Part shown: positions 55,193 to 60,900 of the stretch, piece by piece
Layout of the letters: each line of letters starts with the position of its first letter
Numbering within the stretch: the stretch's first letter is position 1
Assembly (NCBI GenBank): GCA_965235115.1
Contig: OZ249438.1
Span: 9,052,001-9,116,000 of the forward strand
Reading direction: 5' to 3'
From: Laetmonice hystrix
Taxonomy: Eukaryota
DNA: 64,000 nucleotides
Translations under genes and position numbers: made by a program
The notes under the pieces: generated by a model
Told to the model about the DNA's origin: nothing
Databases searched by the model: none
The model's input: the letters and a program-made list of their open reading frames with translations, nothing else

Positions 55193-55918
55193 GTAAGACC
55201 CTTTTGATATTTAGCAAAAAGACTTGTTGCACCTTACAGAAGTTTTTTTCCAGTTCAGCTTTAAGTCTCCTCTAATTTGAAGATAGTGTTTGAGCCCTCT
55301 ATCAGGTTTCTGTGATAAAAAACACATCTAAAATAATTTTATAAATTATTTTTTATTCGGTGTTGAAGCAAATTTTATCTAGGTAAATTTGTGATGAATA
55401 AGGTCAGAGAGGTATAAAAACAGAAAAAGTGGAAAACCCACATTTTTAAGGTTGTCCAGGACTAGCTACCAAGATTGAATATTTTTCTACCATGGTATTT
55501 TATTACGTACACACCAACAAACCCATCGCGAGAATGTTTTCCTAGACATATTCCGACAATCCCTGCATCTGTTGTCTGGTGTAAAAAGATGTAAGCTATA
55601 CTAACCAGGTTAATACGACCTGGGTGTACTGGTAAAAGCAGCCAGGATGTTGTGTTGACTTTCCCTGAATGGTTGTGTTGGCTTAGTTCTTCTGATCTGT
55701 TAACGGTATCCTAAGTATGTCAGGTCAGTAAACTGAGTGTTCTGTCCCGTTATCCTTGTCAAACAAAGATACATTACCAGCTGTGGGATCCTATGAATGG
55801 CTACGACTCCCAGCGTGGGACGGTCGTACTACAATCTACAGAGAATAGTAAATCCTCGCGATCGCAGGGCACTTTGAATAGCAGGTTGAAATTGGTATTT
55901 GTATTCGTTCATACTAAT

Positions 55919-57961
55919 CACTGGCTACACACTGATCATCGTAACGCGCGTTACGCTGATCCAAGATGGACGATCCCGATGCTCGCTTCGCGTGTTTTTG
56001 TTCAAGTTACAAGGGCTACGGTGCATCAACAACATAAAACAACATCTGAATATCATGATAACAATGTGTGCCTGCCGTTTGTCTCAGTTTGGGGTCCTAG
56101 ACGGGCGTAGATTAAGAGAAAATGGACGCAGAAGATTTGGCGATGATACCCGTAACGCGCAGCGCTGATCCCCGTAACGCAAGTTTAATTTGGTGACAGG
56201 ATAGGCGTAACGCGGCACCTAAACCTTTCAAAGGTTTTTACGTAGACGAGTAGACGACTTTCAACATCGGCTCGTGATCTGATAATGAATCTCAACTTTG
56301 TAATGAGCATTATCTACTTCAGTATGAAGGTAAAACCATGAGGTACACGTATATAATAGGGCGCGGATTGACAGCGTGTGTGATACTAGGCCTATACTAT
56401 AGGTGTTAGGCCCATACAGAGTGTGTGTGGACCCCAGGGCGGGGTCACGAATCTAAGACATGCCTGGCAGGCACCATGAGAGATCGAGATGCTTTGTCCT
56501 TCCCAAGTACCCCGGGGTAGAGCACCCTGACTCCTCCGACAGGGAGTACGCTAGTGAATTTTGGGTATTAGCCACAGTGGCTAACAACTGAGGAAAAGAA
56601 CTAGCCACAGGGAAAAAGTTCTAGCCACAGTTGTTTTAATGTTTTTTATTTAGGTAACCAGAGTTCATTATACATGTATTTTAATATCTTTGTATAATAT
56701 AAAGTACATGTACTTTCATTTGCCAGCTGTGTGTAGGCCTAGTGAACGTTTTTGGGGGGGATAAGCTGTCCTATATCTCGAGGATAACTCTACACAAGTG
56801 GCCCTCTTGAGCAGCAAGAATATTGGGATCCAGTACAGTACACCTACACCTCAGAGGAGGCCTGGCCCAAATTGACGGGTACCTAGGCTATAATAACCTC
56901 TCATCACAGCGATCCCCCCTGACAGCCCCCACCCCTCACACCCCCGACCCCCGTACTGAGCGGCCGAGCTGCCTCCCCACCTTCATGCCATGTGACCTCA
57001 GCCATGCTATATGTCGCCTGTCCTCTCCTGGCACACTCAGCATGCCAGGTAATCGGGATATCATTTAAACTAGGCCTATATTACTCCTACAGGCTGACTG
57101 GCATCTGTCATAAACTCATCCCAGATGGACTGGACCCAGGCCGGGGAGACGGGCCAGTACTGAGGGCCGGCCTGACCTGGGGTAGTCCGTAGTAGACTAG
57201 GGGGAACAGACGCATACGGGCGGCTGGCCTTGCCTGGCGGAGAGACCGGGTCGGGTGGGTCGGTCACCCTGGTCTCTGACCACCCACATGTCACACCGAC
57301 ACACGTGCTCCAACCACAGTCAGTGGTGGATCAGGCGTGCATGGGGGGGGGGGAGGAGGACCTGGGCTATAAACTGGAGACAGCTGGAATTTGCAGGCGT
57401 GGCGAATTTGGTGGTTTATTTTGGCAGTGGAACTCGCCACAGGCTGGAAGTATTCGCGTTTGCGAGCGTGGCTACTGCTAACGTACTCCGTTCTACATGA
57501 AGTTAAACTGTCAAAACTCTGCCACAACCTGCACAAGATTTCAAATAACACAAACAATTAAATTCCCTTCAAACGAAAACTGGTGAGAATGGTTTTTCTA
57601 CTTGAAAGACGAAGAATAAAGGCAGTACAGCTTACGAGTGAATGGCAGGCTAACCAGCAATGAGTCGCGTTACGGGTATCAATAATTCGCGTTACGGGTA
57701 TCATTTGTCAACATGCTTGTCCGCGTTACGGGTATCACAGCGAAAATTTCCGGAGCGATTTTTGAGATTTCTAGGCAATCTCAGGCGCCGAGGTTCACCA
57801 AACATGATGCCACCATTACAATAAACAACTCTGACGTCTTACAGATGAATCAGAGACACGGAACTGCTTGAAATACGCCTCGTTTTAGTTGAAGCGAGAC
57901 CTGCCTTCCTCCATCTTGGATCAGCGTAACGCGCGTTACGATGATCAGTGTGTAGCCAGTG
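55919..57961. mobile_element. Non-autonomous DNA transposon, 2043 bp, CACTG termini, 5-bp TSD (Transib/RAG-like end signature), with subterminal repeats
   Basis: Perfect 52-bp TIRs (55919-55970; 57910-57961); CTAAT on both flanks (55914-55918; 57962-57966); repeated GATACCCGTAACGCG-type motifs inside both ends; no transposase ORF seen. Confidence 0.88.
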
Positions 57962-60900
57962 CTAATGGTATGCAGTGTTGGGTGCCGTATGATATCATTA
58001 TTGTGAGATGGAGGCGGGTTGGGAGTTCGTGATCATATGACCGAATGGGAACTTGTATGGTTTGTATGTCCATGGCCAAATCTTGTGTGATTCCACATGA
58101 TCAGAGCGCATTGTGTGCTCTCAGCTAGAAAAGGAAAATAAGCCGAAATATTAATTTTGAAGGCCGTCCTCTTGGCTCTTTTGAGTTTGAGTTCTATCTG
58201 TTATAAACCATGAGATCAACCATGACCAAGATTCGAGTCTTAGCGTCGTAGTTGACGTCAAATATTGGTTTCATGCGAATTCCGGAGGTTTACTAACAAT
58301 CACGTTGGGGCAGGAAAGTCAGGTTCAGGGTCAGATGTATGTCAGGTTGAACTGTAAGGTAGATCTGTCACGTAGTAAGGGAGGGGGTGGCTGGGGTTGG
58401 AAAGAAGGTGGTGAGGGGGGCGGGTTAGTGGACCGTTAGGACTCAACACGCAACATACATTGGAGGGCAGGATCGCACAATTTACGTGTCAATGTCAGGC
58501 TAACCGTGAAATTTTAACTCTCGTTCTGGAGGGGGCAAAATGGTTTCTCTTTACACAATATTGGATCTCGCTCCGACAGAAATAGTGGCGTGATCATGGA
58601 CGGTACCTTCAACCATTTGCGAACAGTAATACACCGTCTTCCTTTGCAATTAGGCGTGGAAAGCTCAAACGGCCGTCTACCCCTTCACCTTTTATGTAAG
58701 AGATATATGTAAGACATGCTATCAGGACCAGAGCTACAACATATAGCAAAACAAGTGTGACCTCAGGAATGCTAGCGTGTGTCTGAAATTGGCAGTGATA
58801 TAGGGGACAAAAACCACAGCTTTTAAAGGCATGCTGTAAGATGGTCTGTCATGAATGTTTGTGTATTATGTTGCCTGTTACCAGACTGTGACAGTTGTTG
58901 GATTCAGCAGCGTAGAATGTGTACTTCACTAGACTCAAGAAAGAAGGTAGAGCTGCGAGGCAACGTTCTTCAGTCTTCTTATCTTCCCAACACACTTGCT
59001 TGGTATCAGTGATATTATGATGGGGGTCAGTGGATATAATATGACCATTAAGTATGTAATTGGGGTCCATTTTAGGATGGAACTATTAATTCTGAGGATT
59101 CTAATTCGAAATGGAGACGGAGAAGAAATCATAAGGTTGTCTTGAACAAACTCTAGCCTGACCAGTTGAGATTTGGATGACCTGCGGTGGCAGTTGAACG
59201 GCTGCTTGTAAAATTGGCAGACAATACAAGGTGCTGATGAAAACTGCACAGGTTTTTGGCCAGGTGACAGGGAAACCTTGGCAGGGGGAGGGTGTAGGTG
59301 GGGGTGGGTGAGGCTGACGGAGTACAATACAGGACAAAGTGTGCGATCCCCGGGGTATGGTTAACAAAGTGTTCCACTGCCTGGGCAGTTGGCCAGATGT
59401 ACGTGAAGTTAGGGCCTCAAGGCGTCCCTCAAGACAGACTTTAGGTTGCTGGGAATACGGCAGCGCCGCTGTCAGGTCCGTACTGTTCTGTAAATATTGG
59501 CATGGCGGGTGAATATTGCACAGTGGGGGAGGGGGTGGGGTGGTCACTCTGGTGCTGAGGGCTGGACCAGCCGGCAGTGGTCTGTGGTACCTTACAGCTA
59601 ATCGATTCTTCTTGGTTCTCAGTGCTGGCCATTCTTTGGGCTACCACAATAAAACATGTAGGAATGGACAAAGTGAACAATGGCCAGTGTTCTTCTGACT
59701 TCAATAGAGCAAGGTTAGAGACTAGGGGAACTTACAGAGGAATTGACACCTGGGTCAGTCATGTTCTCCAAAACAATGGGAGTGGAAGAATATTTTATAG
59801 CGGAGAGGTGAGGAATACATCCAGCAAAAAACTCCAATAGAACAACTAATGTCGATGTCGTAGGTCTGAGGTTGATGAATAACGTGCCGTGGCATATATG
59901 TGATCTGGCAATAACTGCAGCTTCCAGAAAATTGGTTCAATATTCGGAACGGAAACAAATCCACAATATTACTGTAACAGCACCCATAGAACTAGTTGCA
60001 TTTGTAAACATTCAATACTTTGAACGGAATAAGAAGAGGTAAGATTGTGCCTTTCTCACGGTTTGGGCCAGTAACAGACAAAACAGTAAATTCCACGATG
60101 TTCTTCAATGTAATAACCACGATTTAGATGGTTGTTGTTATTTTGGGTTGGCTGATCATGGGTATACATCTGTATTTCCTTTTAATTGTAATATATTACG
60201 TGTCAGTTGTAATCTTACACAATCGACAACAGTGTAATATTCCAGCAATGCCAATTTCTCTGTGCAGCCTTCCTTGGCTGAATAATGTTGTATAAACAGA
60301 CCAAATTCCAATATATCCTCTTCTTTTTCCTTTTGTGTTTTCTGTCAAGAGACAAAGGCATTACATCGCTAGATTATCCATTTATGACATATAAGAATTG
60401 TTTGCGACAGCATCTTTGGAACTTTGCCAAACAAGACCATGAAAATTGCTGCTACTTATAGTAAGCCAAAAGCCAGAATAGTGTGACAAATTTGTGGCCT
60501 TCCATACCTTCCTGGCTATGATTAAGGGGATAGTTATGAACACGGTCCCCTGTCCGACCAGGCGGGGGGGGGGGGGTTTCGGCCCCAGGAGTTAAAGGTG
60601 AGGCCAGGGTGATAGAAACGCAGGTACCATATATCCTTTTAGATGTTACGTCACCTCAATAATGACACGTAATATGTTTTGTGCGTGCAGTTTAAAATTA
60701 TAGCCAAGTCCCTTTTTATGTCGGTAAACATTTTCAATGCTCCTGGTCCTAAAGGTTGGAACATTTGAGGAAGGGTCCTTACGCTTTGGGGCGTTTCTTA
60801 GCAGGTTTAACAACTTAATGAATGTAAAAATATAACCCAGTTATATAAATAAATCTTTTAAATGTTCCGAAATTCCCCTTGAAAACAATGCCATTGTATT

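What the first reader, a model, noticed from the sequence alone, without database searches (positions are those of the whole stretch)
55914..57966. Intact CACTG-ended transposon combining a Transib/RAG-type 5-bp TSD with CACTA-type subterminal repeats
Seen: 52/52 identical TIRs (CACTGGCTACACACTGATCATCGTAACGCGCGTTACGCTGATCCAAGATGGA) and an exact 5-bp TSD CTAAT; 2-, 3- and 4-bp TSDs do not fit. Each TIR holds a perfect 16-bp palindrome CGTAACGCGCGTTACG. The core CGTAACGC recurs three times inside the left end (56144, 56166, 56206), and three perfect inverted copies of CGCGTTACGGGTATCA lie inside the right end (57666, 57688, 57722). Known: CAC termini with 5-bp TSDs define Transib and the RAG-like (ProtoRAG) transposons ancestral to V(D)J recombinase, while arrays of subterminal binding sites are typical of CACTA/EnSpm elements, which have 2-3-bp TSDs. 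As I recall, ProtoRAG TIRs carry a distal GCCATCTTG; here CCAAGATGG lies 35 bp after the first heptamer, in the opposite orientation. Inference: a recently mobilised non-autonomous member of a possibly undescribed Transib/RAG-related family, implying an active transposase elsewhere in the genome. This is the best candidate for a novel system in the window.
Basis: partly seen in the sequence, partly recalled or inferred. Interest (0 to 1): 0.72.

Follow-up and report, generated by a model that had tools for sequence, protein, structure and literature searches.

The report
Young gene-less jumping-DNA family, 5-bp duplications
This is one copy of a recently mobile, protein-less DNA transposon present about 90 times in an invertebrate genome; it has RAG/Transib-like ends and 5-bp duplications, but the enzyme that moves it was not found, so any link to RAG ancestry is unproven.

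Summary
Window 55919-57961 is a 2043-bp element with 52/52 perfect terminal inverted repeats (TIRs), an exact CTAAT target-site duplication (TSD), a 16-bp palindrome in each TIR and three subterminal half-sites per end.

- **Copy number:** the 627-Mb genome holds 195 TIR ends (148 perfect), so about 90 copies.
- **TSD:** 25 of 26 independent insertions have an exact 5-bp TSD and one has 6 bp.
- **Age:** full copies are 98.2% identical on average.
- **Coding:** the element encodes nothing recognisable.
- **Longer copies:** every longer copy I could read is the 2-kb element with an unrelated nested insertion.
- **Relatives:** there is a 58-bp mini-derivative and a roughly 0.85-kb sister family with the same tip and palindrome.

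No autonomous partner was found. Pfam RAG1, P-element, YqaJ and CACTA-transposase hits in the genome all lie outside the TIR-bounded intervals.

The TIR does not fit the Transib heptamer-spacer-nonamer or the RAG-like (RAGL) consensus. Targets are AT-rich (c|AYNRT|g). The ProtoRAG-like CCAAGATGG box is a generic YY1-type motif and is not conserved in the sister family.

Verdict: a new member of a known kind, superfamily unresolved, modest interest. The scan noted another copy of this family before (s1-319995).

The parts
55914..55918 (.). Left copy of the 5-bp target-site duplication, CTAAT
   Evidence: It is identical to 57962-57966.
55919..55970 (+). Left terminal inverted repeat, 52 bp and perfect. 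The tip is CACTGGC.
   Evidence: The genome holds 195 matches to its first 37 nt at up to 3 mismatches, and the control pattern gives 0.
55940..55955 (.). 16-bp perfect palindrome made of two inverted half-sites. It lies inside the 28-bp near-palindrome 55934-55961 and is the proposed docking site for a transposase dimer.
   Evidence: It is invariant between family A and sister family B.
55961..55969 (+). CCAAGATGG, a YY1-type box that contains an ATG and reads inward
   Evidence: It matches the L1 YY1 motif in 12 of 13 positions and is only 6/9 conserved in family B.
55982..55989 (+). CTCGCTTC block, conserved in both ends and in family B. Its mirror copy lies at 57891-57898.
   Evidence: (inverted repeat I1)
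56144..56214 (+). Left subterminal array of three half-sites of the form TGATnCCCGTAACGCG, at 56144-56159, 56166-56180 and 56200-56214
   Evidence: Conserved in 10 of 11 aligned copies.
56215..57665 (.). Non-coding interior. The longest ORF lying wholly inside the element is 88 aa and has no Pfam domain (a 105-aa frame that starts in the left flank overlaps the left end; it was not scanned). No Rfam match. This is the most variable part of the element.
57666..57737 (-). Right subterminal array of three perfect CGCGTTACGGGTATCA sites, at 57666, 57688 and 57722. They mirror the left array.
57910..57961 (-). Right terminal inverted repeat, 52 bp, containing the palindrome at 57925-57940
57962..57966 (.). 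Right copy of the 5-bp target-site duplication, CTAAT

Best explanation
The element is one copy of a young, non-autonomous cut-and-paste DNA transposon family of about 90 copies.

**Shown**
- The ends, the TSD, the copy number, the youth of the family and the absence of coding capacity.

**Inferred mechanism**
- A DDE transposase supplied in trans binds as a dimer to the 16-bp palindrome inside each TIR.
- It also binds the three same-sense half-sites 230-290 bp from each tip, and pairs the two ends.
- It cuts at the CAC/GTG tips and integrates with a 5-bp stagger at weakly palindromic, AT-rich c|AYNRT|g sites.

**Most likely enzyme**
- My best guess, at about 45%, is a Transib-type (RAG1-core-like) transposase from an uncharacterised lineage.
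- Current Pfam/InterPro models probably would not detect such an enzyme: they fail on one Transib lineage.
- The general class, a trans-mobilised non-autonomous TIR transposon, is about 95% certain.
For: - **Ends:** perfect 52-bp TIRs and an exact TSD.
- **Copy number:** 195 TIR ends, 148 of them perfect, and 177 exact 14-nt tips.
- **TSD:** 25 of 26 insertions have an exact 5-bp TSD.
- **Target:** the consensus is c|AYNRT|g. The base just outside 148 perfect ends is T 97, G 33, A 16, C 2.
- **Age:** mean identity of 11 full copies is 98.2%, and the ends are better conserved than the centre.
- **Ends across copies:** 38 of the 40 scored ends match the left 312 bp full-length at about 100% (rounded).
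- **Binding sites:** 10 core motifs against 0.06 expected, mirror-symmetric and conserved across copies.
- **Sister family B** keeps the tip, the palindrome and the CTCGCTTC block but differs elsewhere.
- **Mini-element:** a 58-bp derivative with its own 5-bp TSD, TCTAG, shows that about 29 bp of each tip can suffice to be inserted.
- **No coding capacity:** no Pfam domain and no Rfam match.
- **Literature:** 5-bp TSDs with CAC termini are the published Transib hallmark (PMC1131882). InterProScan gave no domain match for one Transib lineage (Nozomi and its homologues; bioRxiv 10.64898/2026.08.26.747230). The silent RAG1 Pfam search therefore does not exclude Transib.
Against: - No transposase gene was linked to these ends.
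- The TIR does not show the Transib heptamer CACAATG, 23-bp spacer and A-rich nonamer.
- Targets are AT-rich (TSD GC 33%), whereas Transib and RAG prefer GC-rich sites (PMC1131882).
- Subterminal binding-site arrays are typical of CACTA, hAT and P elements, not of described Transib elements.
Confidence: 0.45

Rival explanations
1. The family is mobilised by a CACTA/Mirage/Chapaev (CMC)-type transposase whose clade makes 5-bp rather than 2-4-bp duplications.
For: - The termini are CACTG and there are arrays of subterminal repeats, which is the classic CACTA layout.
- The genome encodes intact Transposase_21-type frames of 847-1074 aa.
- TSD length varies between related lineages within the Transib lineage (one studied alongside CMC), where 5-bp, 3-bp and TA duplications occur.
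Against: - None of the 12 PF02992 hits lies inside or within 70 kb of any TIR-bounded interval or exact 14-nt tip.
- No described CMC family makes 5-bp TSDs.
Confidence: 0.25
2. The Transib-like ends would then be convergent.
For: - Lead s1-344650, which is unchecked.
- P-type domains (94 hits) and YqaJ domains (103 hits) are abundant in the genome.
- Subterminal binding sites are also a P-element feature.
- The AT-rich target and the palindromic TIR fit no described Transib.
Against: - No PF12017 or PF09588 hit lies inside any TIR-bounded interval. The nearest are 3.4-6.7 kb outside copies that sit in transposon-rich regions.
- P elements make 7-8-bp TSDs (from my own knowledge).
Confidence: 0.2
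3. The element is a non-autonomous derivative of a RAG-like (ProtoRAG-type) transposon carrying RAG1L and RAG2L genes. The CCAAGATGG box would be homologous to ProtoRAG TR5.
For: - 5-bp TSD and a CAC tip.
- 8 of 9 nt of TR5 (GCCATCTTG) are present in inverted orientation 35 bp from the heptamer.
Against: - The Pfam RAG1 model finds no candidate anywhere in the genome.
- Only CACT is shared with the RAGL TIR consensus, and the AAA at positions 8-10 is absent.
- The box is the generic YY1 motif and is one of the least conserved parts of the TIR between families A and B.
Confidence: 0.03

Closest known systems
Transib superfamily, non-autonomous Transib-N elements (Kapitonov & Jurka 2005, PMC1131882)
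   Same: - 5-bp TSD.
- 5'-CAC...GTG-3' termini.
- A weakly palindromic target with CA..TG character (compare cCASTGg and CARTG).
- Abundant short, protein-less derivatives.
   Different: - The heptamer is CACTGGC, not CACAATG-like, and there is no A-rich nonamer after a 23-bp spacer.
- The TIR is 52 bp and carries an internal 16-bp palindrome.
- There are three subterminal half-sites per end.
- TSDs are AT-rich rather than GC-rich, and the duplicated 5 bp are the inner AYNRT of cAYNRTg.
- The transposase is unknown.
ProtoRAG / RAGL transposons (PMC8289069, PMC7204232)
   Same: - 5-bp TSD and a CACT tip.
- A YY1-type box about 30-35 bp inside the TIR.
   Different: - The box is inverted relative to TR5 and is not conserved in the sister family.
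- There is no AAA at positions 8-10.
- No RAG1-like sequence is detectable in the genome with Pfam RAG1.
- No RAG1L/RAG2L cargo was found.
CACTA/En-Spm, Mirage and Chapaev (CMC) elements
   Same: - CACTG termini.
- Multiple subterminal repeats in inverted orientation at the two ends.
- Abundant deletion derivatives.
   Different: - The TSD is 5 bp, not 2-4 bp.
- No Transposase_21-type gene is linked to these ends.
Human L1 5'UTR YY1 box (AGCCAAGATGGCCGAATAG, PMC8887483)
   Same: CCAAGATGGnCGA is present in 12 of 13 positions. It points into the element from its end, as in L1, where the box lies at the element's 5' end (L1 position and role are from my own knowledge).
   Different: - L1 is a different class of element, a retrotransposon.
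- Here the G of GCCAT is a T.
- Function is untested.

Membership tests
Transib superfamily | 5-bp target-site duplication | tested here: met
   25 of 26 independent insertions have an exact 5-bp TSD and one has 6 bp.
Transib superfamily | Termini beginning 5'-CAC | tested here: met
   The termini are CACTGG...CCAGTG in all 148 perfect ends.
Transib superfamily | RSS-like TIR: CACAATG-like heptamer, about 23-bp spacer, A-rich nonamer (PMC1131882) | tested here: not met
   The heptamer is CACTGGC. Positions 31-39 read CGTTACGCT, part of a GC-rich palindrome.
Transib superfamily | Preference for GC-rich targets (PMC1131882) | tested here: not met
   TSD GC is 33% and flank GC is 49%. The consensus is c|AYNRT|g.
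Transib superfamily | Transib/RAG1-core-type DDE transposase in the autonomous copy. This is the decisive criterion. | tested here: inconclusive
   No autonomous copy was recovered. Pfam RAG1 gave 0 candidates. InterPro models fail on the one Transib lineage for which this was reported, and the control genomes were silent.
RAGL / ProtoRAG | TIR consensus: TR1 CACTATG plus TR5 GCCATCTTG, or CACTWMCAAACKTYKBB | tested here: not met
   Only CACT is shared. The TR5-like box is inverted and 6/9 conserved in family B.
RAGL / ProtoRAG | Convergent RAG1L-RAG2L gene pair between the TIRs | tested here: inconclusive
   PF12940 has no hit in the genome. No long copy with cargo was readable.
CACTA/Mirage/Chapaev (CMC) | CACTA/CACTG termini with subterminal repeat arrays | tested here: met
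CACTA/Mirage/Chapaev (CMC) | 2-4-bp TSD | tested here: not met
   The TSD is 5 bp in 25 of 26 insertions.
CACTA/Mirage/Chapaev (CMC) | Transposase_21-type transposase linked to the ends | tested here: inconclusive
   There are 12 PF02992 hits, none inside or near a TIR-bounded interval. The TIRs of those elements could not be read.
Non-autonomous TIR transposon (MITE-like) | TIRs plus TSD, many near-identical copies at unrelated sites, no transposase gene | tested here: met

The most novel reading that the evidence does not exclude
Family A, sister family B and the unread 3.2-7.8-kb TIR-bounded elements may be the non-autonomous and autonomous arms of an undescribed DDE lineage. That lineage could be a deep Transib/RAG1 relative or a new superfamily. 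Its transposase would read a 16-bp palindrome inside the TIR plus subterminal half-site arrays, and would make 5-bp duplications at AT-rich cAYNRTg sites. That is a mode of end recognition not described for RAG/Transib enzymes.
Probability: 0.25. Interest if true: 0.6.

Novelty: new member of a known kind. Interest (0 to 1): 0.3.

Why it matters
As it stands, this is a well-documented young, non-autonomous DNA transposon family, useful for annotating this invertebrate genome and as a marker of recent transposition.

It would matter more if the partner enzyme proves to be Transib- or RAG1-related. The family would then show a RAG-clade transposase using a palindromic dimer site and CACTA-style subterminal arrays instead of a heptamer-nonamer signal, with AT-rich targets. 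That bears on how end recognition evolved before V(D)J recombination.

It also illustrates that 5-bp TSDs plus CAC ends are not sufficient to call RAG ancestry.

Tried and rejected
1. **Longer TIR-bounded copies as autonomous elements.** All of the roughly 25 I could read are the 2-kb element plus unrelated nested insertions. These include a Ty1/copia-like element in L032. The inserted segments share no similarity with each other.
2. **Solo ends.** L029/L036 and L030/L037 are truncated left ends of 252 and 288 bp at 100% identity, followed by unrelated DNA.
3. **Pfam searches of the whole genome.** RAG1 gave 0 candidates. P-element, YqaJ and Transposase_21 gave hits, but none coincides with a TIR-bounded interval.
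4. **Large ORFs in fetched loci.** They are retroelement, GPCR or low-complexity sequences, with no transposase and no PDB match.
5. **Element ORFs.** There is no Pfam domain, and none is present in the protein collection, so the look-up of encoding contigs could not be used.
6. **Metagenome scan for the TIR.** 0 hits.
7. **Literature search for the TIR sequence.** It returned only primer-like coincidences.
8. **Rfam on the element.** Nothing.
9. **Hairpin in the TIR.** The z-score is -1.47, which is not remarkable. The palindrome is more likely a protein-binding site than a structure.
10. **A conserved first exon starting at the TIR ATG.** Rejected, because families A and B differ by three non-synonymous changes and a 1-nt indel.
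12. **Genome-letter allowance.** It was exhausted. I used later pattern searches only for coordinates and did not use them to read sequence.
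Full report
**Observation**

The sequence is as described.
- The element spans window 55919-57961 (2043 bp).
- Its first and last 52 nt are perfect inverted repeats, and the arms are 89% complementary over 71 nt.
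- CTAAT flanks both sides.
- Each TIR holds the perfect 16-bp palindrome CGTAACGCGCGTTACG inside a 28-bp near-palindrome.
- No shuffle of the window reproduces the TIR or the palindrome.
- The 8-nt core CGTAACGC occurs 10 times against 0.06 expected. Each TIR holds an inverted pair. Three same-sense copies lie 233/255/288 nt from the left tip and 232/266/288 nt from the right tip, within the longer motif TGATnCCCGTAACGCG.
The core itself starts at 56151, 56173 and 56206.

**Genome census**

The window is C3:9052001-9116000 of a 627-Mb, 35-contig invertebrate assembly.
- The first 37 nt of the TIR match 195 places at up to 3 mismatches, and the control pattern matches none.
- 148 ends are perfect.
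- A complete census of exact 14-nt tips gives 177 ends. That means about 90 copies, mostly as inverted pairs 2.0-2.1 kb apart.
- Of 26 independent insertions for which I hold both flanks, 25 have an exact 5-bp TSD and one (C1:11040048) has 6 bp.
- The target is weakly palindromic and AT-rich: c|A-Y-N-R-T|g, with TSD GC 33% against 49% in the flanks.
- The base just outside the 148 perfect ends is T 97, G 33, A 16 and C 2.

**Age and derivatives**

- Eleven full-length copies are 96.5-99.9% identical pairwise, with a mean of 98.2%. The outer 400-500 bp are better conserved than the centre.
- The left 312 bp match full-length at about 100% (rounded) in 38 of the 40 ends that were scored.
- Three copies on C18 share identical flanks, so they are a segmental duplication rather than separate insertions.
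- Copies of 2.3-9 kb are all the 2-kb element interrupted at different positions by unrelated sequences. One of these is a Ty1/copia-like element with RVT_2 and rve domains.
- L057 holds a 58-bp mini-element. It consists of the two tips fused at the palindrome and has its own TSD, TCTAG. About 29 bp of each end can therefore be enough to be inserted, or a deletion between the palindromes occurred in place.
- Truncated left ends break at 202-312 nt, within or next to the subterminal array.

**Coding capacity**

ORFs lying wholly inside the element are at most 88 aa, the ten longest have no Pfam match even at E 0.1, and there is no Rfam match. A 105-aa frame starts in the left flank and was not scanned. 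The element is non-autonomous.

**Sister family**

I searched for the palindrome in a different sequence context and found 34 sites with a C prefix. They belong to a second family, B.
- Its elements are about 0.8-0.9 kb and it has about 24 ends.
- Its TIR is CACTGGTTAGACACTGATCACCGTAACGCGCGTTACGCTGATCA.
- One end lies in L033:5585-5901.
- Aligning the family A left end, the family A right end and the family B end shows what is constrained: the tip CACTGG, ACACTGATCA, the whole palindrome, CGCTGATC, ATGGA and CTCGCTTC.
- The CCAAGATGG box is only 6/9 conserved.
- A putative ATG-initiated frame is broken by a 1-nt indel and carries only non-synonymous differences, so it is not a conserved exon.

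**Search for the transposase**

- Pfam RAG1 (PF12940) found no candidate in the genome. The control genomes were also silent. A 2026 preprint reports that InterProScan finds no domain in the Transib transposases it studied (the Nozomi lineage). This result therefore argues against a ProtoRAG-type RAG1L but says little about Transib.
- P-element (PF12017, 94 hits), YqaJ (PF09588, 103 hits) and CACTA Transposase_21 (PF02992, 12 hits, with frames up to 1074 aa) domains exist in the genome. None lies inside any TIR-bounded interval. The closest are 3.4-6.7 kb outside copies that sit in transposon-rich regions.
- A central 35-nt marker of the 2-kb element is present in 64 places. It is absent from four long family A pairs.
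- One of these four, C20:10705287-10709091, has a family-B-like variant of the conserved left block. It is the best candidate for a different, possibly coding, relative.
- Two long family B pairs, C2:40800782-40805565 and C29:989760-997584, are also candidates.
I did not try to read sequence by other means.
A metagenome scan for the TIR found nothing. The element's ORFs are not in the protein collection.

**Comparison with known families**

- *Transib.* It is defined by 5-bp TSDs, CAC termini, a CACAATG/23-bp spacer/A-rich nonamer TIR, GC-rich targets and a RAG1-core-like transposase (PMC1131882). The first two features are met, the next two are not, and the last is untested.
- *RAGL/ProtoRAG.* The TIRs are CACTATG plus TR5 GCCATCTTG in lancelets, or CACTWMCAAACKTYKBB in protostomes. 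Only CACT is shared.
- *The TR5-like box.* TR5 is a YY1 site (PMC7481187). The box here is inverted relative to TR5. It matches the YY1 box of the human L1 5'UTR in 12 of 13 positions and in the same inward orientation (PMC8887483). This is best read as independent use of a common promoter element, not homology with ProtoRAG.
- *CMC elements.* They share the CACTG ends and the subterminal arrays but make 2-4-bp TSDs.
- *General caution.* The 2026 preprint also shows that TSD length and TIR sequence vary within the Transib lineage and should not override transposase-based classification.

**Mechanism**

The steps shown are the ends, the 5-bp stagger, the target bias, the copy number, the youth of the family and the lack of genes. 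The following steps are inferred.
- A DDE transposase supplied in trans binds the palindrome as a dimer and binds the subterminal half-sites.
- It synapses the two ends, cuts at the CAC tips and integrates with a 5-bp stagger.
- The YY1-type box may once have driven inward transcription in the parent element.
- I put a Transib-type enzyme at about 45%, a CMC-type enzyme at 25%, another or new superfamily (including P-like) at 20%, and a RAGL-type partner at about 3%.

**Verdict**

- This is a new member of a known kind, a non-autonomous TIR transposon, with its superfamily unresolved. Interest is modest.
- The same family was noted earlier by this scan on another piece of the genome (s1-319995, the 6-bp-TSD copy). 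That note is first-reader only and has no follow-up.

Noticed in passing
L057:30-87 (G000:C6:36975729-36975786): A 58-bp mini-element made only of the two family A tips fused at the 16-bp palindrome, flanked by its own 5-bp TSD, TCTAG.
   Followed up: partly
L033:5585-5901 (G000:C2:36745184 onward) and 34 genome sites: Sister family B, about 0.85 kb, with the same tip and palindrome but non-identical TIRs. Its interior holds a 22-bp tandem repeat, GACATAATTATGTGGCGGCCGC. A similar satellite lies about 120 bp from the mini-element in L057.
   Followed up: partly
L046-L048 (G000:C18:9260737, 9271203, 9275319): Three copies within 15 kb share identical 12-bp flanks and the TSD CAGAT. This is a local segmental duplication carrying the element, not three separate insertions.
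   Followed up: partly
L032:3960-8404, minus strand: A Ty1/copia-like retroelement (RVT_2 and rve domains) with open frames of 988 and 505 aa, nested at position 842 of a family A copy.
   Followed up: partly
G000:C1:28828464-28918873 and G000:C13:27885339-27915197: Long tandem arrays of short open frames matching the P-element transposase domain PF12017. The periods are about 2.2 kb and 1.62 kb. Most C1 units carry one in-frame TGA.
   Followed up: no
G000:C1:26033744-26083104: Eight YqaJ (lambda-exonuclease-like) open frames of 335 aa, repeated every 6.99 kb or so. YqaJ domains are unusually abundant in this genome, with 103 hits.
   Followed up: no
L036:90-341 and L037:95-382; also L031:526-726: Solo left-end fragments 99-100% identical to family A. 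They stop at element positions 252, 288 and 202, the first two within the subterminal half-site array and the third about 30 nt before it. In L031 the flank plus the first 202 bp are duplicated 1150 bp upstream of a full copy.
   Followed up: partly
window:53954-55204, plus strand: A 417-codon open frame (Ser/Glu-rich, no Pfam or PDB match) ends 710 bp upstream of the element. It is probably a large exon of the host gene in whose intron or flank the element sits.
   Followed up: partly
G000:C4:13110523 and G000:C13:15873127: The central marker of the 2-kb element occurs at two places with no recognisable TIR tip nearby. One copy has 3 mismatches. These suggest older or truncated relatives.
   Followed up: no
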